A stretch of 62,913 nt of DNA from Octopus bimaculoides (GCF_001194135.2 NC_068990.1:38631081-38693993), one strand, 5' to 3'; shown: positions 15-56,629, numbered from the stretch's first letter. A program made the numbers and translations. The notes: generated by a model not told the origin, from the sequence alone.

Positions 15-62
15 ATGCGCGAGTGTGTGTGCACGTGCGTGCGTGCGTGTCTTTGTGTGTGC

Positions 63-12596: not shown

Positions 12597-12796
12597 ACTT
12601 ATAAAATTATAGTTACACTTAATATTGCGTGGCAGTTTGATTCTAAGGGATACCTATAGATTCTGCCTCGTGATCATAATGACGGATAGCAAGGATGATT
12701 ATATTAATGATGATGATGATATTCATGATGCTTATTACGAGGAGGTGGATTGGGGTGACAGTGTTGATGACGATGTTTATTTTATAGTTACATACA

Positions 12797-12959
12797 AGGC
12801 GCAGGAGTGGCTGTGTGGTAAGCACCTTGCTTACCAACCACATGGTTCCGGGTTCAGTCCCACTGCGTGGCACCTTGAGCATATGTCTTCTACTGTAGCC
12901 TCGGGCCGACCAAAGCCTTGTGAATGGATTTGTTAGACGGAAACAGAAAGAAGCCCGTC

Positions 12960-13008
<49 letters not shown>

Positions 13009-13256
13009 CGTGTGTGTGTGCGTGTGTGTGTGCGCGTGTGTGTGCGCGTGTGTCTGTGTTTGTCCTCCCCAACATCGCTTCACAACCGATGCTGATGTGT
13101 TTACGCCCTCGTAACTTAGCGGTTCGGCAAAAGATACCGATAGAATAAGTACTATTCTCACAAAGAATAAGTCCTGGAGTCGATTTGCTCGACTTAAAGC
13201 AGTGCTCACGCATGGCCACAGTCAAATGACTGAAACAAGTTAAACAGTTAAACAGT
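12797..13256 (+). mobile_element. tRNA-derived SINE family A, full length, with internal (TA)n(TG)n
   Basis: Head aggcgcaggagtggctgtgtggtaag...ggttcagtccc; 3' end cagtcaaatgactgaaacaagt followed by a short tandem tail; matches the 40589 and 42249 copies. Confidence 0.9.
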
Positions 13257-40514: not shown

Positions 40515-40588
40515 ATATGAATATACCTACACATATAGGTATATGAATATACCTACACATATAGGTATATGAATATACCTACACATAC
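40515..40588. repeat. 26-bp tandem repeat, about 2.9 units (atatgaatatacctacacatataggt)
   Basis: Units start at 40515, 40541 and 40567. Confidence 0.9.
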
Positions 40589-40999
40589 AGGCGCAGGAGT
40601 GGCTGTTTGGTAAGTAGCTTACTCACCAACCACATGGTTCCGAGTTCAGTTCCACTGCGTGGAACTTTTGGCAAATGTCTTCTACTATAGCCTCGGGGCA
40701 ACGAAAGCCTTGTGAGTGGATTTGGTAGACGGAAACTGAAAGAAGCCCGTCGTATATATGTATATGTTTGTGTGTGTATATGTTTGTGTGTCTGTGTTTG
40801 CCCCCCCCCCCAGCATCGCTTGAAAACCGACGCTGGTGTGTTTACGTCCCCGTAACTTAGCAGTTCGGCAAAAAAGACTAATAGAATAAATACTAAGCTT
40901 CCAAAGAATAAGTCCTGGGGTCGATTTGCTCGACTAAAATGGTGGTGCTCCAGCATTGCCGCAGTCAAATGACTGAAAGAGGTAAAAGAGTAAAAGAGT
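40589..40999 (+). mobile_element. tRNA-derived SINE family A, full length
   Basis: Aligns end to end with 12797-13256; tail (taaaagag)n. Confidence 0.9.
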
Positions 41000-41500
41000 A
41001 TATGCGTGTGTGTGTGTGCGTGCGTGAGTGTAGCGTATGAGGGTGTCAGTGTACTCTTACTATTGAATAGACAACTGGAAGTATTTAACTCAATGCAATT
41101 TATAAAAGTTATCAAGGAAAATACGTCCAATGTGCAAATTAATTTCTTTTCCTGTATTATTATGCAGCTGTTTCGCAAGGTCAGTTCTGCTTGTCAAAGC
41201 AAAATCAACATAACTAATTGCGTAGAACACTAAGATCTTTCCAAAGACTTTTCGATACTAAATCATTTTTTATTTTTTTATATTTCAAAAATACTCTTTC
41301 GTTTTAGGAGATAAGTCAAACTGAACTGATAAACGTTAGAAAGTAGAGCAATCCCACTAAGCAATGCAGCCAAATATTTATTATGCCTATCAGTATAAGA
41401 TGCCACATAAATTTGCAGCAGAGACTTCAACGTAAATTTATTATAGGTTAAAAACGTTAAACTGCTGCTATATAGTTATACATAAATGCATGCATAGAGG

Positions 41501-42824: not shown

Positions 42825-44206
42825 ATAACCATCAAAGTACCTACTCCTAATGGCCTCAAATTAAGACCTATAATAACAGGTCCTGCATGTGAAACCTAGT
42901 GCCACAGTAACTTTTGGGATACCCTGTTAAAGTCATTACTCAAGCACATCAAATACTACATAAAGGATGACCTAGATAAGCTGAATCACCTCCGCGAAAC
43001 GACAAATAAATACAACCTGCTGGGTATCATTCGACGTAGTCAATCTCGATTCTAATAACCCCCACAGCTTAGGGCTAGAGGCAATCCAATTCTGGGAAGA
43101 GAATTACTCCAATGAACTCCCACATCGCATCAAAAAAGAATTCGTAATAGAATGTCTAAAATTCATCTTGAAGAATAACATCATTGCATTCAGAGACAAC
43201 TTCTATCGACAAAAATCGGGGACTGCGATGGGTATGAGAATGGTCCCCTCCTTTGCTAACCTGAATTCATAGGATGTATAAAAATCAGTCTTTATTGTAA
43301 GATACCAGAAAAACACGGCAACCTATTCTCCCTCTACACAGAAAATAACTGGAAGAGGTATCTGGATGACTGCTTCATTATTTGGCATGAGAGTGTAGAG
43401 AGACTTAAATAACTTCAAGTACTTATAAATGGACTTGACATAAACGTTCAATTTACGATGGAATATAGCCATCACCAACTTCCATTCCGTGACATCCTCA
43501 TTAAGAAATCCAGCAATAAAATAGAAACAGATATATACTACAAGCCCACGGACTCCAAGCAATATCTACCGTTCAACTCATGCCAACCCAGACACACTAG
43601 AATGAATATCCTCTTCAACTTAGCAAAAACAATTTGTACTATAGTTTTTAATATAAGCACTAAGGACACACTACTACATGAACTAAAATATACACTCATC
43701 AGCAGGAAATACCTACCATCACTAATTGATATTGACTACAACTCAACATCCCAAAACTCAGACATCCCAAAGTAAAGAAGGATTTGCAACCAAAAGCCCT
43801 ATCATACATCTCCACACACAACCCCCTTAACAATGAAGCCTTCAACACCATCCTCCAGAACATTCCTCTACTAAAAGGGGGCTGCAGAATAAATCTAATC
43901 CTCTAAACGCACACCATCATAAAAGAGCAAAAGACAACTCAAGTCAATGAAAAGTCTCCTGAAACAAACCCAAGTACACTCAGCAGCAACATTGAAACCG
44001 TCAGTCATTCAGGGATCGGAATTCTCCTTCAAACAAGGTCAACATTTTACAGTGAAAAATAACTTCATATGTGCTTCCGAAAAGCTAATATATTTGTTAA
44101 CTTGCGCAGGATATCGACAGCAATACATAGGCCCAACCAAAAACAGTCTACGCCAGAGGATGACTATACATAGATCCCAGATTAAAATACGGGAATATAG
44201 AAAAAT
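42825..44206 (+). mobile_element. Penelope-like retroelement fossil: reverse transcriptase plus GIY-YIG endonuclease, with frameshifts and stops, truncated at both ends
   Basis: Manual translation gives LKLRPIITGPACET, KHIKYYIKDDLD, LVSFDVVNL..N.PHSLGLEAIQFW, FYRQKSGTAMGMRMVPSFANL, WKRYLDDCFIIW (YxDD), ETDIYYKPTDSKQYLPFNSCQPRH, and LIYLLTCAG..QQYIGPTKNSLRQRMTIHRSQI (GIY-YIG-like). This is the order typical of Penelope-like elements. Confidence 0.9.
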
Positions 44207-44238
44207 AGCAGATGTGATAACCACTACACCATGGAACC
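44207..44238 (-). pseudogene. tRNA-Val 5' half (nt 1-32) abutting the Penelope-like element
   Basis: Reverse complement = ggttccatggtgtagtggttatcacatctgct, identical to the intact copies. Confidence 0.9.
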
Positions 44239-44799
44239 AATCAGCAACAAACCCCAAATGTTGCTTTAACAAATACAAAATACCTGGTTGTGTTCAATTG
44301 TGTCCATTGGCTGGGATCATTGCCAATCAAGACATGCCCTACCATATTAGAAACAACAACAACAAAACGTTTTGAAAATAACAATGACAATATTTCGTAA
44401 CATCTACAAGCAAATAAAGAAAATAGAATTAGGTTCTTTGAAATACGGAGTGAAATATCAGTGAATCATTCATGTATGTTGTTGTTGTGTTGACACCAGA
44501 ATATCTCTGGTACTTATTCTCAAGTCTATTTAAAGAGATAAATACCCGTATTGATATTAGACATGTGTAAAATACAAAAATGGAGGGAGATTTCCAAATA
44601 CCGTGATGCATGAACAATTCTGAGGTTCTGGAAGTCACGAAACTAAATGGTAAAGCAGGAACCGTACCAGCATCACCAGCAACTACAACAGTAACAACAA
44701 CAATAAAGCGTCGTCGTCGAAAACAACAGCAACGCTTGAACTTAAAAGCAAAATAAACTAATAAAGAAAAATAATAATAAGCAAAATATAAAGACGATA

Positions 44800-44871
44800 G
44801 GTTCCGGCGAGTTTCGAAAACACGACCTTCTGCATGTTAAGCAGAAGTGATAACCATTACACCCTGGAACC
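44800..44871 (-). pseudogene. tRNA-Val(AAC) pseudogene (copy A)
   Basis: ggttccagggtgtaatggttatcacttctgcttAACatgcagaaggtcgtgttttcgaaactcgccggaacc; T-stem, B box and acceptor pair 7 are damaged. Confidence 0.85.
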
Positions 44872-44924
44872 AGGCATTACTGACTTACTCAAATATTGTT
44901 TTATAATTCACAAGTTGTAGCTAA

Positions 44925-45320
44925 TGCTTTCTAATTGATATATCAATATCAGCAGATGACAAAGTTTCCCTAAAAGAAATGGAGAAACTTTCAAAATACA
45001 AAGACCTGGAAATAAAGGTAACTCGAATGTGGAATCTAAAAACAGAAACAATTCCTATCATAGTAGGTGCATTAGGTATTATAAAATAATATTCAGATAA
45101 ATACATAACAAAACACCAGGACTTACAAATATATATAACATACAGAAAATTGCACTACTGGGCACTGCACACATCCTACGCAAAATACTTTCAATACAGT
45201 AACCATAAGAGCATCACAGCAAACCCCAGCACATTCCCAAGGCACACAGAGCTGCGCTCGGTAGTGAAGTGAAAGCACGTTATAAAAATAGAACTACTGA
45301 ACGATAACAATAATGATAAT
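44925..45320 (+). mobile_element. Non-LTR retrotransposon 3' end, RLE type (R4/Dong-like), with 3' UTR and degenerate (AAT) tail
   Basis: Translation CFLIDISISADDKVSLKEMEKLSKYKDLEIKVTRMWNLKTETIPIIVGALGII...IQKIALLGTAHILRKILSIQ* is a restriction-like endonuclease C-terminus. Confidence 0.8.
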
Positions 45321-45415
45321 GCAAAAAGATTGAGGCTAGATTCGAACACGCAACTCTCATTGAGGAAAGCGGCCGTGATTCCTCGATATACCAGTCGTCT
45401 TTATATTTTCCAAAT

Positions 45416-45575
45416 GAGCTGGCAGAATAGTTTCGATTCAGGACAATAACCTTTGCGGCATATCGTTCACCTTTATGTTCTGAGTTCAAAAGCTACCGAA
45501 ATAGACTTTGACTTTAATTTTCTTGGGGTCGATAAAATAATTACGTGTTGAACTGGTGTCAACGTAATCGACTTA
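45416..45575 (+). mobile_element. Diverged SINE family C inside duplicated block X (45310-45575, repeated at about 51900-52200)
   Basis: gagctggcagaatag...gttctgagttcaaaagctaccgaaatagactttg...ggtcgataaaataattac occurs in both places. Confidence 0.8.
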
Positions 45576-45974
45576 CGAGTTGTCATTCACGAGTTGTATC
45601 TAATGCTGAATTTAATGTTGAATTCCTTTTCANNNNNNNNNNNNNNNNNNNNNNNNNNNNNNNNNNNNNNNNNNNNNNNNNNNNNNNNNNNNNNNNNNNN
45701 NNNNNNNNNNNNNNNNNNNNNNNNNNNNNNNNTGTATCTAATACTGAATTTAATGTTGAATTCCTTTTCAAAACACAATGGACTACCAGAAACTGTGAAG
45801 TAGCTAAAAGTATTTAGGGTTTCGAATCCTGCTGCAGATCACTTTCCATTTAATGAAGACTAAATCGGGGTTGGGGTATTAGCACCAATAACTATAGAAA
45901 ATGCAACAAACTTAATATAGCAATCTCCTCTATAAAAAATAACTGTGTAAAAGCAATAGAGAAAACAAATGATA

Positions 45975-46046
45975 GGTTCCAGGGAGTTTCGAACTCACGA
46001 CCTTCTGCGTGTGAAGCAGATGTGATAACCACTAAACCATGGAACC
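45975..46046 (-). tRNA. tRNA-Val-CAC: tRNA-Val(CAC)-like (copy B), D- and T-stem mismatches, possibly a pseudogene
   Basis: ggttccatggtttagtggttatcacatctgcttCACacgcagaaggtcgtgagttcgaaactccctggaacc. Confidence 0.6.
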
Positions 46047-46317
46047 ACATGCCGACTGTTTTCCATCATTGTCATATTATATTGGAGCTGTGAAGAGCAG
46101 AGCTCGCCGAATCGTTAGAACGCCCGTCATAACGAATAGCAGTATTTCGTCCGTACTTACGTTCTGAGCGCAAATTCATCCTTTTCGGGTCGATAAATTA
46201 AGTTCCAGAGAAAAACTGAGGTTGCTGGAATCGACTCATCCTCGACCTCCCCCAAGCTGCTGTTGTGGCCAAAATTTGAAATAATACTAATTATTGTTAT
46301 ATTTCGGTGACCGGAGA

Positions 46318-46352
46318 TTAAGCAGATGTAATAGCCGCTACACCGTGGAAAC
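46318..46352 (-). pseudogene. tRNA-Val 5' fragment (copy C, about nt 1-35)
   Basis: Plus-strand ttaagcagatgtaatagccgctacaccgtggaaac, followed by the standard array spacer. Confidence 0.75.
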
Positions 46353-46638
46353 AGTATTTAGTAACCCCGTCAAATATTGTTTTATCATTCACGAGTTGTA
46401 TCTAATGCTGAATTTAATGTTGAATTCATTTTCAAAACACAATGGAGTATCAGAAACTGTGAATTAGCTAAATGTATTTAGGGTTTCCAATCCTGCTGCA
46501 GTTCACTTTCCATTTAATTTAGACAAAATCGGGGTTGGAGTATTAGTACCAATGACTATAGTAACTGCAACAAACTAAATATAGCAATCTCCTTTATTAA
46601 CGAATCCTGTGTAAAATCAAAAGAGAAAACAAATGATA

Positions 46639-46710
46639 GGTTCCAGCGAATTTCGAAATCACGACCTTCTGCGTGCTAAGCAGATGTGATAGCCACTACA
46701 CCATGAAACC
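46639..46710 (-). pseudogene. tRNA-Val-body pseudogene with AGC (Ala) anticodon (copy D)
   Basis: ggtttcatggtgtagtggctatcacatctgcttAGCacgcagaaggtcgtgatttcgaaattcgctggaacc; G53 and C61 are both lost. Confidence 0.85.
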
Positions 46711-47521
46711 AGTTGTTAGTGACGCCGTCAAATATTGTTTTATAATTCACGAATTGTATCTAATGCTGAATTTAATATTGAATTCCTTTTCAAAACACAA
46801 TGGTGTATCAGATACTGTGAATTAGCTAAAAGTATTTAGGGTTTCGAATCCTGCTGCAGTTCACATTCCATTTAATTTAGACTAATTTAGCATTCCACCA
46901 AATGCTATATCCTATCAATACACCACCCTGGAATTTTACTCTATTTATCGTCCCCAAACTGATAAAAGCCATAAGTGACCGAAGTAACTGGATTTAAATA
47001 TTTAACTCATCAAATTATAAGGTATATTCTGAAGTCAATGATTTTACTCAATTGAATATTGTAGACTGTTATATATATTATATAAATATTGTAAATTAAC
47101 TAATCGATAATGTTTTATAACTATATCGAAATTTAAATTATTAATACACAGGTTTTGTATAAATACAGTAAATAAGTGATATCAATGCCTAACATAATAA
47201 AATCATTAACTTCAGAACCACAGCACTATGGAAACAGTAATTAGTGACCCCGTTAAATATTGTTTTATCGTTCACGAGTTGTATCTAATGCTGAATTTAA
47301 TGTTGAATTCCTTTCCAAAACACAATGGTGCATCAGAAACTGTGAATTTGCTAAAAGTATTTAGGGTTTCGAATCCTGCTGCAGTTCACTTTCCATTTAA
47401 TGAAGACTCAATCGGGGTTGGGGTATTAGCACCAATAACTATAGTAAATACAACAAACTAAATATAGCAATGTCCTCTATAAAAAATTCCGGTGTGAAAG
47501 CAAAAGAGAAAACTAACGATA

Positions 47522-47594
47522 GGTTCCACCGAGTTTCGAACTCACGACCATTCAGCGTCTGAATCAGATGTGATAACCACTACACCATGGAACC
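47522..47594 (-). pseudogene. tRNA-Val-body pseudogene with CAG anticodon (copy F)
   Basis: ggttccatggtgtagtggttatcacatctgattCAGacgctgaatggtcgtgagttcgaaactcggtggaacc; anticodon stem broken, 1-nt insertion. Confidence 0.85.
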
Positions 47595-47902
47595 ATATAC
47601 CGGCTGTTTTCCATTATTGTCATATTATATTGGAGCTGTGAGGTGCAAAGCTGGCCAAATCGTTAGCACGCCCTTCAAAATGAATAGCAGCATTTTGTCT
47701 GTACTTACGGTCTGAGCACAAATTCATCCTTTTCGGGTCGATAAATTAAGTACCAGTGAAAAACTAATCGATAATGTTTTATAAATATATCGATATTTAA
47801 ATTATTAATACAGAGATTTTGTATAAATACAATAAATAAGTGATATCAATGCCTAACATAATAAAATCATTAACCTCAGGAGAGGAAAAAAAAAAAGAGC
47901 TA

Positions 47903-47974
47903 TGTTCCAGCGAATTTCGTACTTATGACCTACTGCGTTTTAAGCAGATGTAATAGCAACTACACCGTGGAAAC
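47903..47974 (-). pseudogene. Heavily decayed tRNA-Val-body pseudogene with AAA anticodon (copy G)
   Basis: gtttccacggtgtagttgctattacatctgcttAAAacgcagtaggtcataagtacgaaattcgctggaaca. Confidence 0.8.
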
Positions 47975-48260
47975 AGTAATTAGTGACATTGTCAAATATT
48001 GTTTTATCATTCACGAGGTCTTTCTAATGCTGAATTTAATGTTGAATTCCATTTCAAAACACAATGGTGTATCAGAATCTGTGAATTAGCTAAAAGTATT
48101 TAGGGTATCGAATCCTGCTGCAATTCACTTTCTATTCAATGCAGACTAAATCGGGGTTGGGGTATTAGCAACAATAACTATAGCAAATACAACAAACTAA
48201 ATATAGCAATCTCCTCTATAAAGAATTCCGGTGTAAAAGCAAAAGAGAAAACATTTGTCA

Positions 48261-48332
48261 GTTTCCAGCGAGTTTCGAATTCACGACCTTCTGCGTATAG
48301 AGTAGATGTAATAACCACTACACCATGGTACC
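48261..48332 (-). pseudogene. tRNA-Val-body pseudogene with TAT anticodon (copy H)
   Basis: Anticodon arm tctac-tcTATac-gcaga with a mismatch; acceptor stem has mismatches. Confidence 0.8.
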
Positions 48333-48617
48333 AGTTATTAGTGAATAACTGAAATATTGTTTTATCATTCACGAGTTGTATCTAATGTTGAATTTAATGT
48401 TGAATTCCTTTTCAAAACACAATGGAGTATCAGAAACTGTGAATTAGCTAAAAGTATTTAGGGTTTCGAATCCTGCTGCAATTCACCTTCCATTTATGTT
48501 GACTAAATCGGTGTTGGGGTATTATCACCAATAACTGTAGTAAATGCAACAAACTAAATATAGCAATCTCCTCTATAAATAATACCTGTGTAAAATCAAA
48601 AGAGAAAACAAATGATA

Positions 48618-48653
48618 GGTTCCAGCGAGTTTTGAACTCACGTCCATGGAACC
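48618..48653 (-). pseudogene. Internally deleted tRNA-Val (copy I, 36 nt: acceptor stem plus T arm only)
   Basis: ggttcca-tggac-gtgag-ttcaaaa-ctcgc-tggaacc. Confidence 0.85.
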
Positions 48654-49593
48654 AGTTGATGACGTGTTATCAAATATTGATTTGTCATATAAAGATGTTG
48701 TGGGTTGTACAGAGTTTAATGGTGATTTACTTTTAAAAGGACCGTGGAATCTCAGAAATAGTAAATTAACAACAACAAAAATTAGTTATATTTTTTTCCA
48801 ATTCAGGATTCGAATCCTGCTGGAGTTGACTTTAACCTCCACGTACTCGGGGTATCATAAAATATTGGTCAGTTCTTTTGGTCAAATATACATCGAGTTT
48901 ATCAACTGGGCTCTTTCTAGAAATATTTGTCTGTGAATCAACGTGAGCGATGAAAATTTAAAAAAAGTGCAATATTAATTGAGAAGATCAATAATTACCA
49001 ATAGAACAGATCACTATTGTATAAACTCCTAAGGATATAGAATGGAAAGCGAACTGCAGCAGGATTCAAAATCCTGACCTCTCCTTGTTAATGTACCATT
49101 TACGATACTCCACTGAGTTTTGAAAACTAACTCTACATTAAACTCTGCACAAAATAATTGTGTATGACAAAACAATATCTGATATAACGACAGCATGCGT
49201 TTCCATGGTGTAGTGGTTATCACATCTGCTTAACACGTAGAAGGTCGTGAGTTCGAAACTCGCTGGAACCTAGTTGTTTTATATTTTATTTGTATTTAAC
49301 GCCACCACCCTCATTACTGTTGGTGGGCAAAGGCTGCCTTTTCTCACAGACATTTAGTTCCAGTTATTGTTATGTTGTTATACAAATACCCAACCCCGCC
49401 AACGATGACCATGATTAAACGCAGTCATGTATTAAAGTTTGTCTCTGTAAAATTTGACGGTCGAGACAATATTGATATCAAATATTGGCACAAGTCCAAC
49501 AATCTCGGAAGAGGGCATAAATTGATCATATGGACCCCATTACTCAAATAAGAGAATAGGGAGAAATATTCAAATATTGTGAGTTAAAAAAAT
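48643..49593 (+). repeat. ~950-bp cassette carrying a divergent tRNA pair, duplicated at 55419-56373
   Basis: Collinear by eye from ccatggaaccagttgatg to aaatattgtgagttaaaaaaatt in both copies. Confidence 0.9.
49199..49270 (+). tRNA. tRNA-Val-AAC: tRNA-Val(AAC) (copy J), T2.C71 mismatch and G.U in the anticodon stem
   Basis: gtttccatggtgtagtggttatcacatctgcttAACacgtagaaggtcgtgagttcgaaactcgctggaacc; A and B boxes intact; TTTT 7 nt downstream. Confidence 0.7.
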
Positions 49594-49987
49594 TCCTGGT
49601 GATGAACGTATCCTTTAGTTCATATAGTGGTGTGTCCCTGGTGCTTGTATTAGAAAATATAGTAGAGATCCTTTTTGCTATGTTGGAGGGGATATTCATT
49701 CTGATGTGTCTGGGGTGGCATGAGTTCAACGGTAGATACTGCTTGGAGTCCGTGGGTTTATAGTATATATATCTGTTTCTATTACGTTGTTAGATTTCTT
49801 AATGAGGATATCGAGGAAGGGAAACTGTTGATGGCTATATTCCATCGTGAATTGAATGTTTACATTAAGTATATTTTTAAGTGCTTCAAATTCTTTAAGT
49901 CTCTATACTTTCATGCCGAATAATGAAACATTCATCCAGGTGTCTCTTCCAGTTATTTTCTATGAAGAAGGAGAATGAGTTGCCGTA
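49593..49987 (-). mobile_element. Penelope-like RT fragment (second, diverged copy)
   Basis: Reverse complement aligns with about 43310-43705 (gaaaataactggaagag...atggaatatagccatca...cccacggactccaagca.tatctaccgtt.aactcatgcca.cccagacaca). Confidence 0.85.
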
Positions 49988-50560
49988 GATCAAAATTCCG
50001 AAAAACAGAAAAATATCATTCACTCAACATATCGACAATTGCGCTAATAACAAAAATCAGAATGTTTGCCCTCTAACAATTCAGGGACGATACAACCTGT
50101 AGCCAACAAATTAGTAAAGAGCCTTTCTTTATCACGAAATACAGACCCCTTTCCAACGCATCTACAACAAATGACATATCCACCACGACCTTAGAATAAC
50201 ACACACGCAAATATTAAAAATGATACATTCAAAAGAGATAGCCAAGAATTCAATTCAAAATAGTCCTAATCACTACTATAATCCACAACGAGCAACTTTT
50301 AGGTCCCTTGAGCATTTAACATCCAGATCTTGTTCAAAACGGGGGCACCAGTTTTCATTTATGTTTTATGTAGTGTTTTTGGTTCCAAAAGACTTTCAAA
50401 CTTCGTATACTTATCTATTTTGTGTTATAGAACAGAAAAAAATTTTGTATTCGAATTTATTTCATGTAAAAAATTGTCTTATTTCGATCATTTCTACTAA
50501 TCACTGACGTCTATTCAGTTGAAAACAGTTAGCGCAGTAACGGTGTATATCGTATTAATC

Positions 50561-50640
50561 CCCTAACCCTAACCCTAACCCTAACCCTAGACTGTTAACC
50601 CTAACCCTAACCCTAACCCTAAAACTAATCCTAACTCTAG
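50561..50640. repeat. Interstitial telomere-type (CCCTAA)n: 4 units plus a partial unit, 9-nt interruption, 4 units, then degenerate units
   Basis: Direct reading. Confidence 0.9.
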
Positions 50641-51872
50641 AATCCGAACTCTAAAATTGTTACACACATAGATACGCACAGCGTAATTTATTATATAAAC
50701 AATATATGCGTATAAATTACGATTAAACCGGATGAAATATGTCACAGGGNNNNNNNNNNNNNNNNNNNNNNNNNNNNNNNNNNNNNNNNNNNNNNNNNNN
50801 NNNNNNNNNNNNNNNNNNNNNNNNNNNNNNNNNNNNNNNNNNNNNNNNNNNNNNNNNNNNNNNNNNNNNNNNNNNNNNNNNNNNNNNNNNNNNNNNNNNN
50901 NNNNNNNNNNNNNNNNNNNNNNNNNNNNNNNNNNNNNNNNNNNNNNNNNNNNNNNNNNNNNNNNNNNNNNNNNNNNNNNNNNNNNNNNNNNNNNNNNNNN
51001 NNNNNNNNNNNNNNNNNNNNNNNNNNNNNNNNNNNNNNNNNNNNNNNNNNNNNNNNNNNNNNNNNNNNNNNNNNNNNNNNNNNNNNNNNNNNNNNNNNNN
51101 NNNNNNNNNNNNNNNNNNNNNNNNNNNNNNNNNNNNNNNNNNNNNNNNNNNNNNNNNNNNNNNNNNNNNNNNNNNNNNNNNNNNNNNNNNNNNNNNNNNN
51201 NNNNNNNNNNNNNNNNNNNNNNNNNNNNNNNNNNNNNNNNNNNNNNNNNNNNNNNNNNNNNNNNNNNNNNNNNNNNNNNNNNNNNNNNNNNNNNNNNNNN
51301 NNNNNNNNNNNNNNNNNNNNNNNNNNNNNNNNNNNNNNNNNNNNNNNNNNNNNNNNNNNNNNNNNNNNNNNNNNNNNNNNNNNNNNNNNNNNNNNNNNNN
51401 NNNNNNNNNNNNNNNNNNNNNNNNNNNNNNNNNNNNNNNNNNNNNNNNNNNNNNNNNNTATACGAGTAAAAATAAATACAAAAAAGGTGGGTTTTTTTGT
51501 ATGATTGTGTATAGAGGAATATATTATTTTGCTTAAAAGAGTTCCAACACTGTCTGTTTTTTATGTTTTATTTATATTCCTGCAGAACTAATGTGGGGTA
51601 TAGAATATGGAATATACAATATATAATATGATATACAATATACAATATAAAATAAAATAAAATAAAAATGGATGGCACCATGAAAGAAAGTATTGAATGT
51701 AGATGAAATATTGAGTGTTCAATATAAAGGATCAAATATATAAATATATAAATATAAATATATATATATAAAGGCGACTCGAGTTTCAGGGCTATTTCCC
51801 TTCGTCATGGCCGGTATGACGTGTGTGTGTGTGTATTGTTTTATGTATATATTGATATTAAAACTACTGAAA

Positions 51873-51909
<37 letters not shown>

Positions 51910-52296
51910 CAAAAAGATTGAAGTTAGATTCGAACACGCGACTCTCATTCAGGAAAGCGGCCGTGATTCCTCGACATACCAATCGACTTTATATTTTCTA
52001 TATAAGCTGGCAGAATAGTTTCGACGCCGGACAATATCCTTAGCGGCATATCGTTCACCTTTATGTTCTGAGTTCAAAAGCTACCGAAATAGACTTTGCC
52101 TTTCATTTTCTTGGAGTCGATAAAATAATTACTTGTTGAACTGGTGTCAACATAATCGACTTACTCCCTCACTCGAAATTACCGACCTTGTGCTAATGTT
52201 TCCAATCAATAACAGGAACTAAACGGTGGTGAGAAAAAACAACCTTTACAGCACCAACAGCATTACATTATGTTGAAGCAAAATATAAAGACGATA

Positions 52297-52368
52297 GGTT
52301 CCAGTGAGTTTTGAACTCACGCCCTTCTGCGTGTTAAGCAGATGTGATAACCACTACACCATGGAACC
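52297..52368 (-). tRNA. tRNA-Val-AAC: tRNA-Val(AAC) (copy K), intact cloverleaf
   Basis: ggttccatggtgtagtggttatcacatctgcttAACacgcagaagggcgtgagttcaaaactcactggaacc; acceptor, anticodon and T stems pair fully, D stem as in the other intact copies. Confidence 0.8.
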
Positions 52369-52419
52369 AGATGCCGCCTGTTTTCCATCATTGTTATATT
52401 ATATTTGAGATGTGAGAAG

Positions 52420-52605
52420 CAAAGCTGGCCGAATCGTTAGCACGCTCGATAAAATACTTAGTAGTATTTCGTCCGTACTTACATTCTGAGTTCAAATTCA
52501 TCCTTTTCGGGTCTAGAAATTAAGTACCAATGAAAAACTGAGGTCGATGTAATCGACTCATGCCCCACCTCCCCCAAGCTGCCCTTGTGGCAACAATTTA
52601 AAATA
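52420..52605 (+). mobile_element. SINE family C inside duplicated block Y (also at about 46095-46290 and 47650-47762)
   Basis: gctggccgaatcgttagcacgc...gtatttcgtccgtacttac.ttctgag..caaattcatcctttt is shared by the three places. Confidence 0.8.
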
Positions 52606-53019
52606 ATACTAATTATTATTATATTTCGGTGAACGGAGATTGAATTCGAACACAAAACCTACAAAACCAGAAAACTTTCCACCAAATGTTTTATTCTACC
52701 AATGCACCACTCTGGAATTCTACTTTATTTATCGACCCCGAACTGATGAAAGCCATAAGTGACCGAAGTGACTAGATTTAAATATTTAACTCATCAAATT
52801 ATACGGAATATTCTCAAGTAAATGATTTTACTCAATAGAATATTGTAGACTGTTATATACATTATATAAAGTATTATAAATTATCTAATCGATAATGTTT
52901 TATAACTATATCGATATTTAAATTATTAATTCACTTGTGTTGTGTAAATACAATAAATAAGTGATATCAATGCCTAACCCAATAAAATCATTAACCTCAG
53001 GAGAGGAAATAAAAAAGTA

Positions 53020-53091
53020 GGCTCCAGTGAGTTTCGAACTCACGACCTTCTGCGTGTAAAGCAGATGTGATAACCACTACACCATGGAACC
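53020..53091 (-). tRNA. tRNA-Val-TAC: tRNA-Val(TAC) (copy L), intact
   Basis: ggttccatggtgtagtggttatcacatctgcttTACacgcagaaggtcgtgagttcgaaactcactggagcc; one G.U in the acceptor stem; T6 terminator 3 nt downstream. Confidence 0.85.
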
Positions 53092-53627
53092 ACCTGTTAT
53101 TCATAACCCCAAAATTTTTCGTTTCATATATAAGTGAAATCGATCCGGAGATCTAACTATACAACAATGGACTGTTCTATTGTAGACTGAGGGGTGGAAA
53201 GGCCAGACTCATCAACAACTGGAACAAAACCGTCGTTGACTACAACATCATAAGCAACTATAGATCTTGTTTTCCTGCTTCCAGTGATGTTAAGATTTAT
53301 ACCAGTAATATTCTGTGACTAGAGTTTATCCACTGAACGCTCTTTAGAAATATCTGTCTGTGAGTTAACGTTAGAGATAAATAGTGAGAGAAGATCAATA
53401 TTCATTGCAAAGATCAAAAATTGCGAATGGAACTGGTCATTATTGTATAAGCCCCTAAATACATAAAATGGAAAGTGAACTCGAGCAGGATTCGAAAACC
53501 TAAATACTTTTTGTTAATTCACCGTTTCTGATACTCCGCAGTATTTTGAAAGCTACCTCAACATTAAACTCTGCGTAGGTTACAACTAAGCTATGATAAA
53601 ACAATATTTGAGAACGTTCAAGCATCT

Positions 53628-53699
53628 GGTTCCATGGGGTAGTGGTTATCACATCTGCTTAATACGCAGAAAGTCGTGAGTTCGAAACTCGCTGGAAGC
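53628..53699 (+). pseudogene. tRNA-Val-body gene with AAT (Ile) anticodon (copy M), mismatches at 2:71 and 11:24
   Basis: ggttccatggggtagtggttatcacatctgcttAATacgcagaaagtcgtgagttcgaaactcgctggaagc; B box intact. Confidence 0.75.
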
Positions 53700-53731
53700 T
53701 AATTGTTTTACATTTTGCTAGTATATAATGG

Positions 53732-53938
53732 TTTCTACTCTAGGCACAAGGCCCGAAATTTTGTAGAAGGGGCAAGTCGATTAGATCGACTTCAGTATGC
53801 AACTGGTACTTAATTTATCTACGCCGAAAGGATAAAAAGCAAAGTCGACCTCGGCGGAATTTGAACTCAGAACGTAAAGACAGACGAAATACCACGAAGC
53901 ATTGCGCCAAGCATGCTATCGTTTGTCAGCTCGCCGCC
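53732..53938 (-). mobile_element. SINE family C, full length
   Basis: Reverse complement runs from ggcggcgagctgacaaacgatagc through gttctgagttcaaattccgccgaggtcgactttgc to tttcgggccttgtgcctagagtagaaa. Confidence 0.9.
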
Positions 53939-54145
53939 ATATTTTGCTAGTACATAATGCCACCACCCACATTGATGCTGGTATTGCAAATGCTGTTGTT
54001 GTCGGCGACGTTTGGTTCCACTTGTTGTTACTATTGTGTTGTAGAGTGGGCCCTCTCTGCCCGCACTACCGATGAGTACAGACAGACTCAGTGATATATC
54101 AAAGTTTGACATTGGAAAATTTGTCAGTAGGGACAATTCGTTTCA

Positions 54146-54318
54146 AATTTTAGTACGAGGCCAGCAATTTCAATGGGAGGAGATAAATCGATTACATCAA
54201 CCCCAATACTCAACTGGTATGTATTTTATCGACGCCGGCGGAATTTGAATTCAGAACGTAAAGACGGACGAAATGCCGTTAAGCTTTTTACCCAGGGTGC
54301 TAACGAATCTGCGAAACT
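54146..54318 (-). mobile_element. SINE family C with internal deletion
   Basis: gcggaatttgaattcagaacgtaaagacggacgaaatgccg and attacatcaaccccaatactcaactggta match family C. Confidence 0.8.
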
Positions 54319-54371
54319 GGTTCCTTACATCTTCGATATAATTAAACAATAATTAAGTGAAGTTCGTGTCT

Positions 54372-54443
54372 GGTTCCATGGTGTAGTGGTTATCACATCT
54401 GCTTCACACGCAGAAGGTCCTGAGTTCGAAACTCGCTGGAACC
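54372..54443 (+). tRNA. tRNA-Val-CAC: tRNA-Val(CAC) (copy N), single C49.C65 mismatch
   Basis: ggttccatggtgtagtggttatcacatctgcttCACacgcagaaggtcctgagttcgaaactcgctggaacc; T-rich tract downstream. Confidence 0.8.
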
Positions 54444-55243
54444 TACTATTTGTTTTCTATTTTGTTTTGAGCCTGGGGTTTCTAATACAATGGGAGTGGA
54501 GATTGATATTTTTAGTTTCTTCTATTTGCTATAGTTATTGGTTCTAATATCCCACCCGTATTTGTCTTCATTGTCAACGCTTCTCTCTTAAGACATAAAT
54601 AGTAATATCGACCTCGGCCATATTTAAAATAAGAAAGCTCTTACACAAAACAGCACTCAGTGAGGGCAAACAGAGTGTTTCATGATTGTGGAGCTAATTA
54701 CGTAACTATGAACAGGTCTATACATAATGAGTGGTGTAAAGATCCAGACCGCTGTATAACGGTTTCAATACTCTATTGAATATTCTTTTCCCTTAATTGT
54801 GATATGAATATTCTTGAGAGTTTGAAGAACTTAACAATCTCTGGTTTCTATTTCTCTCTCTTTTAAAACTCAGAGAGAAACCTTTGTATGAATTGACGAC
54901 AAAACCAAAAATAGTGAAGAGAGAGAAACTGTAGTGTTCCGGATTAAAGGTTCTCTAGTATTCACATTCCGTTAGATTCTTAGTTGTTGTTTCTGATCAA
55001 ACAGACTTATATTTAAAGTATGTCAGCCATGACCATCTCATCTTATTATCAAACAATGTATCCAAGACTTCAGTATCCAGGGTCCACTCTTTTTATTTCT
55101 CTTCCAATTCATATTTAGTGAGCCTTAAAGTGTTTGGTTCTAGATTTACGACCTGGTCACTGATATGTGACAACACGTGTAGGGCGCGCTGCTGTTGTTT
55201 TTGAAGTTGATGCTAATATATCAACACCTATTCCTATAAAAGT

Positions 55244-55382
55244 AGAGCTAAAGAAGTAAATATTAGGTTCCAGAGCTAAAGAAGTAAATCTTAGGTTCCA
55301 GAGCTAAAGAAGTAAATCTTAGGTTCCAGAGCTAAAGAAGTAAATCTTAGGTTCCAGAGCTAAAGAAGTAAATCTTAGGTTC
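55244..55382. repeat. 28-bp tandem repeat x5 (agagctaaagaagtaaatcttaggttcc), each unit containing the tRNA 3' acceptor strand
   Basis: Units start at 55244, 55272, 55300, 55328 and 55356; the minus strand reads ctggaacct-aagatttacttctttagct. Confidence 0.95.
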
Positions 55383-55385
55383 ACA

Positions 55386-55428
55386 TCTGCGTGTTAAGCA
55401 GATGTGATAACCATTACACCATGGAACC
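55386..55428 (-). pseudogene. tRNA-Val(AAC) 5' part (copy O, nt 1-43), 3' half replaced
   Basis: ggttccatggtgtaatggttatcacatctgcttAACacgcaga continues into tgtgaacc, an inverted copy of its own D-arm sequence. Confidence 0.85.
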
Positions 55429-55976
55429 AGTTGATGGCGTTTTATCAAATATTCCTTTATCATATAAAGAAGTTTTGGGTTGTACAGAGTTTCATGGTGA
55501 TTTACTTTAAAAATGACCGTGGAATCTCAGTAATGGTAAATTAACAAAAACAAAAAAAGGACGTGATATTTATTTTCAATTCAGGTTTCGAATCCTGCTG
55601 GAGTTGACTTTAACCTCCACGTACTCGGGGTATCATAACATATTGGTCAGTTCTTTTGGTCAAATGTACGTCGAGTTTATCAACTGGGCTCTTTCTAGAA
55701 ATATCTGTCTGTGAATCAATGTGAGAGATGAAAAGTAAAAGAAAGTTCAATATTAATTGAGAAGATCAATAATTACCAATAGAACAGGTCATTATTGTAT
55801 TGACCCCTAAGGATATAGAATGGAAACTGAACTGCAGCAGGATTCGAAATCCTAATCTCTCCTTGTTGATGTACCATTTTTGATACTCCACTGAGTTTTG
55901 AAAACTAACTCTGCATTAAACTCTGCACAAAATAATTGTGTATGACAAAACAAAATCTGATACACCGACAGCAACT

Positions 55977-56048
55977 GGTTCCATAGTGTAGTGGTTATCA
56001 CATCTGCTTAACACGCAGAAGGTCGTGAGTTCGAAACTCGCTGGAACC
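55977..56048 (+). tRNA. tRNA-Val-AAC: tRNA-Val(AAC) (copy P), intact cloverleaf
   Basis: GGTTCCA TA GTGT AGTGGTTA TCAC A TCTGC TT-AAC-AC GCAGA AGGTC GTGAG TTCGAAA CTCGC TGGAACC; A and B boxes intact; TTTT 7 nt downstream. Confidence 0.88.
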
Positions 56049-56602
56049 TAGTTGTTTTATATTTTATTTGTATTTAGTGCCACCGCCCTCATTACTGTTG
56101 GTGAGGCAAAGGCTCCTTTTTCTCACAGACGTTTAGTTCCAGTTATTGTTATGTTGTTATACAAATACCCAACCCCGCCAACGATGACCATGATTAAACG
56201 CAGTCATGTATTAAAGTTTGTCTCTGTAAAATTTGTCGGTCGAGACAATATTGATATCAAATATTAGCTCAAGTCCAACAATCTCGGAAGAGGGCGTAAA
56301 TTGATCATATGGACCCCAGTACTCAAATAAGCAAATAGGGAGAAGTATTCAAATATTGTGAGTTAAAAAAATTTTCTCAAGATCACATTCAGTGAAGTCG
56401 ACCTGGAACCTCATGATTGCAAAGCTAACCATATAACTTATAGAGTGGCCTAACGTACAATAAAATGTGTAAAGGTCTAGATCCATCACAGCAATAACTG
56501 AGACAAAATATCAAGTACTATAAGAACAACATCAGGATTTACAACATCATGTTATTTAGTGTGGTAGAGCCTTGGCCAATCAAAGAAAAAAAAATGTAAA
56601 TA

Positions 56603-56629
56603 GGTTCCAGCGAGTTTCGAACTCACGAC
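56603..56629 (-). pseudogene. tRNA-Val 3' fragment (copy Q: T arm plus acceptor 3' strand)
   Basis: Plus-strand ggttccagcgagtttcgaactcacgac is identical to the 3' part of copy P. Confidence 0.85.

What the first reader, a model, noticed from the sequence alone, without database searches (positions are those of the whole stretch)
44207..56629. Cryptic tRNA-Val cluster: one gene body carrying all three Val anticodons
Seen: 18 copies or fragments (those listed as features plus a short 5'-end remnant at ~47227-47235) of one 72-nt body in 12.4 kb. Near-intact copies carry AAC (J, K, P), CAC (B, N) or TAC (L) on an otherwise near-identical scaffold. Established (recalled, not searched): in human and fly, Val(AAC/CAC) and Val(TAC) have distinct bodies (GTTTCCG with a TTCGC/TCCGC stem versus GGTTCCA with a TCTGC/GCAGA stem). 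The body here is the TAC type, with an AAC/CAC-like TTCGAAA T-loop. Inference: a TAC-type gene was amplified at the DNA level (shared flanks, no encoded CCA, no A-tail) and repeatedly changed position 34, so isoacceptors are arising by anticodon shift inside an array.
Basis: partly seen in the sequence, partly recalled or inferred. Interest (0 to 1): 0.8.

Follow-up and report, generated by a model that had tools for sequence, protein, structure and literature searches.

The report
Decaying valine tRNA gene cluster
About 12 kb of this animal genome holds twelve duplicated valine tRNA genes and six broken pieces; related organisms also carry all three valine anticodons on one gene body, so this is an ordinary, partly decayed tRNA gene cluster, not a place where new tRNAs are being born.

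Summary
Twelve full-length copies and six partial copies of one 73-nt tRNA-Val body lie between 44207 and 56629, and none lies elsewhere in the window. Clean or nearly clean copies carry AAC (K, P, J), CAC (N, B) and TAC (L).

DNA-level duplication is confirmed: shared flanks, a ~358-nt tandem sub-array and a large segmental duplication. Two claims fail.

1. The body is not TAC-specific. Its 37-nt core occurs in 24 other eukaryotic Val bodies, mostly with AAC.
2. Relatives already have the arrangement. Tandem arrays (L064, L070, L071, L072) carry AAC, CAC and TAC on one homogenised body with the same T at position 73.

Inside the window, flanks track the anticodon. There is an AAC unit type, a CAC unit type and a TAC unit type, plus four units with mixed flanks. 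No point mutation at position 34 is needed in any intact copy.

Copies with non-Val anticodons (AGC, CAG, AAA, TAT, AAT) mostly carry more damage elsewhere and are pseudogenes.

This is a birth-and-death tRNA gene cluster of a known kind. The most unusual by-product is the U73 discriminator, where A73 is described as almost strictly conserved.

The parts
44207..44238 (-). 5' half of the tRNA-Val body (positions 1-32), fused to a truncated GIY-YIG ORF of a Penelope-like element
   Evidence: 0 mismatches; weak Pfam GIY-YIG hit (E 6.5e-4, below the gathering score) on ORF 43947-44375
44799..44871 (-). A2: full-length copy, anticodon AAC, pseudogene (7 changes, 3 extra stem mismatches, 35 bits)
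45633..45732 (.). Assembly gap (100 N). The 38 nt on each side are 37/38 identical, so it is an unmerged overlap or a collapsed repeat unit. It cuts no listed copy.
45974..46046 (-). B: tRNA-Val CAC, damaged (T12xC23, T50xC64), 52 bits. CAC-type unit: upstream type 2 plus downstream type a.
46318..46352 (-). Cf: truncated copy, positions 1-35. Positional counterpart of F in the ~1.55-kb higher-order repeat.
46638..46710 (-). D: pseudogene, anticodon AGC (A35G), 5 changes. Mixed flanks: upstream type 1 plus downstream type a.
47216..47235 (-). Remnant of positions 1-20, joined directly to the type-c downstream flank
47521..47594 (-). E: pseudogene, anticodon CAG (C36G) with a 1-nt insertion. 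CAC-type unit, paralogue of B.
47902..47974 (-). F: pseudogene, anticodon AAA, 12 changes, below the Rfam listing threshold
48260..48332 (-). G: pseudogene, anticodon TAT, 8 changes, 30 bits
48617..48653 (-). Hf: internally deleted copy (positions 1-10 joined to 47-73)
49199..49271 (+). J: tRNA-Val AAC with T2xC71 mismatch, 50.5 bits. AAC-type unit, paralogue of P.
50750..51458 (.). Assembly gap (709 N) between the two halves of the cluster. No homology across it.
52296..52368 (-). K: tRNA-Val AAC, intact cloverleaf, 64.9 bits. Its upstream flank is the CAC type (84-86% to B) and its downstream flank is the AAC type.
53019..53091 (-). L: tRNA-Val TAC, intact cloverleaf (U3.G70 wobble), 64.7 bits, with its own proximal upstream flank and a T6 terminator at +3
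53628..53700 (+). M: pseudogene, anticodon AAT (C36T at a CpG), 2 extra stem mismatches. AAC-type unit.
54372..54444 (+). N: tRNA-Val CAC, one T-stem mismatch (C49xC65), 54.2 bits. Old CAC-type unit.
55377..55428 (-). Of: internally deleted copy (positions 1-43 plus a remnant of the 3' end). Positional paralogue of Hf with a different deletion.
55977..56049 (+). P: tRNA-Val AAC, intact cloverleaf, 63.5 bits, closest to the consensus
56602..56629 (-). Qf: 3' fragment, positions 46-73
45304..49594 (.). Segment 1 of the large segmental duplication. It contains the ~358-nt-period tandem sub-array (45.7-48.7 kb) organised as two ~1.55-kb blocks.
51892..56373 (.). Segment 2, paralogous to segment 1 at 86-93% identity (offsets 6588, 6322, 5784, 5121, 6775), with inverted units M and N

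Best explanation
This is a nuclear, Pol III-type tRNA-Val multigene cluster evolving by birth and death.

Inferred ancestral state: three unit types, each with its own flanks but the same 73-nt body. These are an AAC unit (upstream type 1 plus downstream type b), a CAC unit (upstream type 2 plus downstream type a) and a TAC unit (its own upstream plus downstream type c).

Shown: the units were multiplied at the DNA level. The products are a ~358-nt head-to-tail sub-array, a ~1.55-kb block duplication, a ~4.4-kb segmental duplication and inversions.

Inferred mechanism: unequal crossing-over and gene conversion caused the duplications. The shared gene body is the stretch of homology where diverged units recombine. 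That would give units with mixed flanks (D, G, F, K), and it would make K look like an anticodon shift.

Shown: three copies keep a fully intact cloverleaf (K and P with AAC, L with TAC). N (CAC) keeps all but one pair. B and J are damaged.

Inferred: these copies are or recently were working genes. The rest are pseudogenes, whose anticodon positions 35/36 and bodies have decayed, or deletion derivatives.

Shown in other organisms: one body carrying all three Val anticodons is the ordinary, homogenised state of the Val family in related organisms. Inferred: the same holds for this lineage.
For: Detection:
- Every tRNA hit in the window lies in this stretch, with 0 matches expected by chance.

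Duplication structure:
- Flanks are shared over 100-500 nt on both sides, with ~358-nt spacing and offsets of about 5.1-6.8 kb between the two segments.

Anticodon follows flank type:
- Upstream type 1 plus downstream type b: A2, J, P, M, all with A34.
- Upstream type 2 plus downstream type a: B, E, N, all with C34.
- L, with its own upstream flank, has T34.
- K has a type 2 upstream flank (84-86% to B) but a type b downstream flank (70-81% to J, P, M) and A34.

Constraint on the body:
- Among B, J, K, L, N and P the tRNA identity is 93-96% while most of their flanks are at the random level of 50%. B-N: 3/73 differences against 54/150, p = 3e-8.
- In the young sub-array the tRNA diverges no slower than the flanks (D, F, G: 77-85% against 89-91%).
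- Copies with non-Val anticodons carry 3-11 other changes. Copies with Val anticodons carry 1-3, except A2 with 7.

Gene features:
- Intact stems in K, P and L.
- TTTT at +3 to +13 in every full copy, and an AT-rich box at about -20 to -40.

Relatives:
- L072 repeats a 2.84-kb unit at least 4 times, holding Val-TAC, AAC, CAC and AAC on one body with T73.
- L071 has CAC, TAC and AAC within 870 nt.
- L064, L068 and L070 have identical AAC and CAC bodies that differ from the window consensus at 4 positions.
- One body carries both AAC and TAC in another organism, L011/L043.

Literature:
- Isoacceptor changes at position 34 and concerted evolution of tRNA families are documented (PMC3923123; PMC4981973 abstract).
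Against: - There are no expression, charging or modification data, so 'functional' rests on sequence integrity alone.
- The rest of the source genome could not be searched. The working Val genes may lie elsewhere, and this whole cluster could be dead.
- No CAC copy here has a perfect cloverleaf.
- K's A34 could be a point mutation rather than a crossover. No other body site distinguishes the AAC from the CAC lineage, so the two cannot be told apart.
- The taxonomy of the relatives is unknown, and their flanks do not align with the window. 'Relative' therefore rests on 73 nt.
- Both gaps limit statements about the order and number of copies.
Confidence: 0.8

Rival explanations
1. A single TAC-type Val gene was amplified, and position 34 then mutated repeatedly inside the array, so that new AAC and CAC isoacceptors are being created here.
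For: - All copies share one body, and position 34 varies in 5 of 12 copies against 5.4% of cells elsewhere.
- B (CAC) and K (AAC) are flank-defined paralogues that differ at position 34.
- Isoacceptor shifts at position 34 are a documented process (PMC3923123).
Against: - The core is used with AAC more often than with TAC in other eukaryotes.
- Relatives already hold all three anticodons on one homogenised body.
- The anticodon co-segregates with flank families that have diverged beyond alignment, so the three types are older than anything alignable here.
- The array's majority and consensus anticodon is AAC, and only one copy is TAC.
- K has mixed flanks.
Confidence: 0.07
2. The copies are a tRNA-Val-derived SINE, or another retroposed repeat dispersed through the genome.
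For: - Many copies are degenerate.
- The window is rich in SINE-like and Penelope-like repeats.
- The genome-wide copy number could not be checked.
Against: - There is no tRNA-unrelated body or tail, no A-tail and no CCA.
- Homology extends hundreds of nt upstream as well as downstream.
- The arrangement is head-to-tail and periodic.
- No copy lies outside 44.2-56.6 kb in the 63-kb window.
Confidence: 0.03
3. The whole cluster is a dead pseudogene array. The intact-looking copies are simply the youngest or least mutated ones, and the working Val genes are elsewhere.
For: - Every copy differs from the consensus, unlike the perfectly homogenised arrays of the relatives.
- Recent paralogues diverge about as fast as their flanks. 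J-P: 3/73 against 15/150. B-K: 5/73 against 24/150.
- TE fragments and deletions are interspersed.
Against: - Bodies of B, J, K, L, N and P stay 93-96% identical while most of their flanks have decayed to random. This requires long-term constraint or gene conversion on the gene.
- K, P and L keep perfect stems, terminators and upstream AT-rich boxes.
Confidence: 0.1

Closest known systems
Tandem and clustered nuclear tRNA gene arrays under concerted or birth-and-death evolution, as seen here in loci L064, L070 and L072 and described generally in PMC4981973
   Same: - Pol III tRNA genes with their own short flanks are multiplied head-to-tail and in inverted orientation.
- Bodies are kept alike while spacers diverge.
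- Pseudogenes and fragments lie among the intact copies.
   Different: - The window's cluster is much less homogenised than the relatives' arrays, because every copy differs.
- It is Val-only.
- It is interrupted by transposon fragments and two assembly gaps.
Isoacceptor anticodon shifts (Rogers & Griffiths-Jones 2014, RNA 20:269, PMC3923123)
   Same: Flank-defined paralogues B (CAC) and K (AAC) differ at the first anticodon base. In that survey 39 of 44 isoacceptor shifts occurred at that base.
   Different: - Here the flanks of K are mixed, so recombination between pre-existing AAC and CAC units explains it as well as a point mutation does.
- No shift is needed for any other intact copy.
Human tRNA-Val-AAC and Val-CAC sharing one body, with Val-TAC on a separate body (my recollection of GtRNAdb, not tested here)
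   Same: Isoacceptors of one amino acid share a nearly identical body. The window's positions 1-48 are almost identical to the human Val-TAC body.
   Different: - Here, and in L071 and L072, all three anticodons share the body.
- The discriminator is U73, not A73.
tRNA-derived SINEs
   Same: Multiple degenerate tRNA-like copies with A and B boxes.
   Different: No retroposition hallmarks, and the flanks are shared on both sides. A defining feature was tested and not met.

Membership tests
Eukaryotic nuclear tRNA-Val gene | Cloverleaf and tRNA covariance-model score above the gathering threshold | tested here: met
   RF00005 scores of 30-65 bits (gathering score 29) for 11 of 12 full copies. 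K, L and P score 63.5-64.9. Stems are intact in K, L and P.
Eukaryotic nuclear tRNA-Val gene | Valine anticodon NAC, with A35 and C36 as identity elements | tested here: met
   A2, J, K and P have AAC. B and N have CAC. L has TAC. Five other copies have lost A35 or C36.
Eukaryotic nuclear tRNA-Val gene | Discriminator A73, described as almost strictly conserved in tRNA-Val (PMC9976931, Table 4) | tested here: not met
   All 12 full copies have T73. The homogenised Val genes of L064, L070, L071 and L072 and 8 of 24 environmental bodies also have T73. This therefore looks like a lineage trait rather than a defect.
Eukaryotic nuclear tRNA-Val gene | Pol III signals: internal A and B boxes, and an oligo-T terminator just downstream | tested here: met
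   - A-box region TGGTGTAGTGG and B-box region GTTCGAAAC, read directly from the sequence.
- TTTT at +3 to +13 in all 12 full copies.
- Promoter activity itself was not tested.
Eukaryotic nuclear tRNA-Val gene | Transcribed, processed, CCA-added and charged with valine | not testable with these tools
   Needs tRNA sequencing and charging assays.
Isoacceptor anticodon shift (in the sense of PMC3923123) | Genes shown by flanking sequence to be orthologues or paralogues, with the same amino acid but different anticodons | tested here: inconclusive
   B and K share 84-86% of their upstream flank and have CAC against AAC. K's downstream flank belongs to the AAC unit type, so a crossover is an equally good explanation.
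tRNA-derived SINE | tRNA-related head, an unrelated body, a 3' tail, target-site duplications and dispersed insertion | tested here: not met
   - No tail or CCA.
- Homology continues upstream of position 1.
- The copies are clustered and periodic.
- Genome-wide dispersal could not be tested.
Tandem tRNA gene array with concerted evolution | Repeated units with gene bodies more alike than their spacers | tested here: met
   tRNA identity is 93-96% against spacer identity of 50-66% for old pairs. The exception is the young D/F/G sub-array, which decays neutrally.

The most novel reading that the evidence does not exclude
The cytosolic tRNA-Val of this lineage, and of several other, apparently marine, eukaryotes, uses U73 as its discriminator. 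A73 is described as almost strictly conserved in all domains of life and as an identity determinant for ValRS. If these U73 tRNAs are the working valine tRNAs, the ValRS of these organisms must have relaxed or changed its reading of position 73. That would be a lineage-specific rewiring of a class I identity set that has gone unremarked.
Probability: 0.4. Interest if true: 0.5.

Novelty: new member of a known kind. Interest (0 to 1): 0.25.

Why it matters
Mainly as a correction. The rule recalled from human and fly, that Val-TAC has its own body, does not hold generally. One body carrying all three valine anticodons is therefore not evidence that isoacceptors are being born on the spot.

The cluster is a usable small example of how the conserved 73-nt gene body can act as a recombination patch that shuffles the flanks of diverged tRNA units.

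The U73 discriminator is a concrete lead for work on tRNA identity. It is shared with homogenised arrays in other organisms, and it could be tested by valylating U73 and A73 transcripts with the cognate ValRS.

Tried and rejected
- A first metagenome scan with a strict pattern that fixed the TTCGAAAC T-loop found nothing. A looser 37-nt core gave 63 loci.
- Full-text paper searches for the tRNA sequence and for the SINE sequence found nothing.
- Finding the source record through a window ORF failed, because the ORF is not on record. A homologue of the Penelope-like element led to an unnamed ENA contig. The organism therefore stays unidentified. 'Octopus-like' rests only on my memory of its SINE and on the TTAGGG-type repeat.
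- BLAST of the relatives' loci against the window found no flank homology beyond the gene and the T-rich terminator, so orthology cannot be claimed.
- The tRNA-like stretch at 45335-45379 and 51915-51967 is not a further Val copy. ARAGORN does not call it and Rfam gives no tRNA hit at E up to 5. It lies inside a 273-nt repeat that also holds a SINE-like sequence.
- 'The anticodon is a mutational hot spot'. The excess is real in raw counts (10/36 against 45/840), but the copies are not independent. The position-34 part follows flank ancestry. Two of the four position-36 changes are C-to-T at a CpG. I did not pursue it as a separate phenomenon.
- 'tRNA bodies mutate faster than flanks in the young sub-array'. 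Only one pair reaches p = 0.013 uncorrected, so it was not claimed.
- A literature search for U73 in tRNA-Val found no report. The library is limited.

Full report
**Observation.** ARAGORN finds nine tRNAs in the 62,913-base window, and Rfam RF00005 finds eight at its gathering threshold. All lie between 45974 and 56049. A permissive Rfam scan of 42.7-58 kb adds three more above the gathering score and one truncated hit. BLAST with the consensus body lists twelve full-length copies and five clear fragments. Nothing but short chance matches occurs elsewhere in the window. The 5' half and the 3' third of the body each match 13 times at up to 3 mismatches, with none expected in 100 shuffles.

Reading the partial copies base by base gave six:
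- 44207-44238: positions 1-32.
- 46318-46352: positions 1-35.
- 47216-47235: positions 1-20.
- 48617-48653: positions 1-10 joined to 47-73.
- 55377-55428: positions 1-43 plus a stub of the 3' end.
- 56602-56629: positions 46-73.

Five other full copies carry AGC (D), CAG (E), AAA (F), TAT (G) and AAT (M). A2 is a degenerate AAC copy.

**Gaps.**
- Gap 45633-45732 is exactly 100 N. The 38 nt before it and the 38 nt after it are 37/38 identical. Either the two contig ends overlap and the gap is spurious, or at least one repeat unit is collapsed there. The repeat pattern predicts a tRNA position at this place. No listed copy is cut.
- Across gap 50750-51458 there is no homology. The two halves of the cluster (44.2-49.3 kb and 51.9-56.6 kb) are joined only by scaffolding. 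Each half stands on its own.

**Anatomy.** The copies carry flanks that are shared over 100-500 nt on both sides.
- Between 45.7 and 48.7 kb they form a head-to-tail sub-array on the minus strand. A tRNA position recurs roughly every 300-380 nt, and the repeat-unit spacing is 358 nt.
- That sub-array is organised as two ~1.55-kb blocks: B-Cf-D-remnant and E-F-G-Hf.
- A larger segmental duplication pairs 45304-49594 with 51892-56373 at 86-93% identity. B pairs with K, Hf with Of, and J with P.
- No copy encodes CCA or has an A-tail, and all twelve have TTTT within 3-13 nt.

DNA-level duplication is therefore confirmed, and a SINE origin is rejected.

**Which copies look alive.** K, P (AAC) and L (TAC) have every stem pair intact apart from the family-wide U13xU22. 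They score 63.5-64.9 bits. N (CAC) has one T-stem mismatch (54 bits). B and J are damaged (50-52 bits). The rest have two to five extra mismatches.

Among B, J, K, L, N and P the bodies are 93-96% identical, although most of their flanks are at the random level of 50%. For B-N the counts are 3/73 against 54/150, p = 3e-8. The gene body has therefore been held constant by selection or by gene conversion.

In the young sub-array the bodies diverge no slower than the flanks (D, F, G: 77-85% against 89-91%). Copies with non-Val anticodons carry 3-11 further changes, against 1-3 in Val-anticodon copies other than A2. These are pseudogenes that were duplicated along with their units.

A scan of public metagenome contigs for the 37-nt core, with position 34 left free, returned 63 loci and 76 genes: 53 AAC, 21 TAC and 2 CAC. 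These fall into 24 distinct full-length bodies. Nine are seen only with AAC, twelve only with TAC, two only with CAC, and one with both AAC and TAC. The core is therefore a general eukaryotic Val core and does not mark TAC.

**Relatives.** Translating the tRNA in its open frames and searching the protein collection found called ORFs that run across Val genes. Their contigs show the following.
- L064-L068 (TARA and other marine metagenomes): a 1088-bp tandem unit with Leu-TAG, two Val-CAC, Val-AAC and Thr-TGT. The CAC and AAC bodies are identical to each other (one L068 copy has a single substitution). They differ from the window consensus at only four positions, have the same TTCGAAA loop, and have T at position 73.
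- L070: the same body in a slightly different array.
- L071: CAC, TAC and AAC within 870 nt on near-identical bodies.
- L072 (a 124-kb eukaryotic contig): a 2.84-kb unit repeated at least four times, holding Val-TAC, AAC, CAC and AAC on one body. The TAC copy differs at a single acceptor-stem base, and all copies have T73. Its T-loop is TTCGAGC.

One body with all three anticodons, arranged in Val arrays, is therefore the ordinary, homogenised condition in related organisms. The taxonomy of these organisms is unknown, and their flanks do not align with the window.

**History inside the window.** Flank types follow the anticodon.
- Units with upstream type 1 (…TGATAAAACAATATTTGA…) and downstream type b (A2, J, P, M) all have A34.
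- Units with upstream type 2 (…AATATAATATGACAATGATGG…) and downstream type a (B, E, N) all have C34.
- L, with its own proximal upstream flank and downstream type c, has T34.
- Four units have mixed flanks: D and G (type 1 + a), F (type 1 + c) and K (type 2 + b). In three of them position 34 matches one parental type. The exception is G, a heavily damaged pseudogene.

The flank families are unalignable between types and only 64-70% identical within types. The three isoacceptor genes are therefore older than anything alignable here. No point mutation at position 34 is required in any intact copy.

K is the one 'shifted' intact gene. It has a CAC-type upstream flank and an AAC-type downstream flank. 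This is what a crossover or conversion inside the shared body would produce. A point mutation cannot be excluded, because no other body site separates the two lineages.

**Comparison with what is known.**
- Isoacceptor changes at the first anticodon base are documented: 39 of 44 isoacceptor shifts in the survey of Rogers and Griffiths-Jones (PMC3923123).
- tRNA families are known to evolve in clusters under concerted evolution (PMC4981973, abstract).
- The cluster is a new example of a known kind.

The DNA-level amplification and the single body are right. The TAC founder and the repeated on-site creation of isoacceptors are not.

**By-product.** All twelve copies, all Val genes of L064, L070, L071 and L072, and 8 of the 24 environmental bodies have T at the discriminator position. 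[quoted passage not shown] Two literature searches found no report of U73 Val tRNAs. This is the most novel reading left open. It needs taxonomic placement and a valylation assay.

**Verdict.** The cluster is an ordinary, partly decayed tRNA-Val gene cluster of low interest in itself, with a moderate side lead in U73.

Noticed in passing
all 12 full copies in window 44799-56049; L064, L070, L071, L072; L008, L011, L018, L042: The discriminator base of these Val tRNAs is T (U73), although A73 is described as almost strictly conserved in tRNA-Val (PMC9976931). U73 also occurs in homogenised arrays of other organisms and in 8 of 24 environmental bodies.
   Followed up: partly
window 43395-44206 (+) and 49593-49908 (-): Fragments of a Penelope-like retroelement: homologues carry Pfam PF26215 (HTH_animal), and the second ORF has a weak, sub-threshold GIY-YIG match. 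That ORF is cut off exactly where the tRNA 5' half (44207-44238) begins, so this is a rearrangement junction and not a target-site insertion. The two fragments are inverted relative to each other (83% identity) and bracket segment 1.
   Followed up: partly
window 50561-50619: Two short runs of telomere-type repeat (CCCTAA)n, interstitial, about 130 nt to the left of the 709-N gap.
   Followed up: no
window 45595-45632 and 45733-45770: The sequences on the two sides of the 100-N gap are 37/38 identical. This is probably an unmerged contig overlap or a collapsed repeat.
   Followed up: yes
window 48617-48653 and 55377-55428: Two positional paralogues in the large duplication carry different internal deletions of the tRNA: positions 11-46 in one and 44-65 in the other. 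Four other partial copies break between positions 20 and 46. Breakpoints therefore cluster in the D-arm to variable-loop part of the gene.
   Followed up: partly
window ~45440-45594 (+), 53845-53921, 54229-54305, and ORF-like traces at 12643-13209 and 40579-41178: Copies of a SINE-like repeat with a tRNA-like T-arm (…GTTCTGAGTTCAAATTCCGCCGAGGTCGA… / …GGGGTCGATAAAATAA…). From memory it resembles an abundant octopus SINE, but I could not verify this. The tRNA-like stretch at 45335-45379 and 51915-51967 lies in the same 273-nt repeat.
   Followed up: partly
window, about -18 to -41 upstream of each full copy: An AT-rich box is kept in all three upstream flank types at a similar distance from the gene: ATAAAACAATATTTG, ATATAATATGACAATGATG and TATATATGAAACGAAAAATTTT. 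It may be an upstream Pol III promoter element.
   Followed up: no
L071 758-833: The Val-TAC gene of this relative is followed directly by CCA in the DNA, unlike its CAC and AAC neighbours.
   Followed up: no
window positions 34-36 of the 12 copies: Position 36 changed in four copies in three different ways (T in M and G, A in F, G in E). C36 is followed by G37, so the two C-to-T changes are at a CpG.
   Followed up: partly
whole window: There are 17 N gaps, most of them flanked by (TA)n, (TG)n or (CA)n microsatellites. GC content is about 35%. I recognised no protein-coding exon.
   Followed up: no
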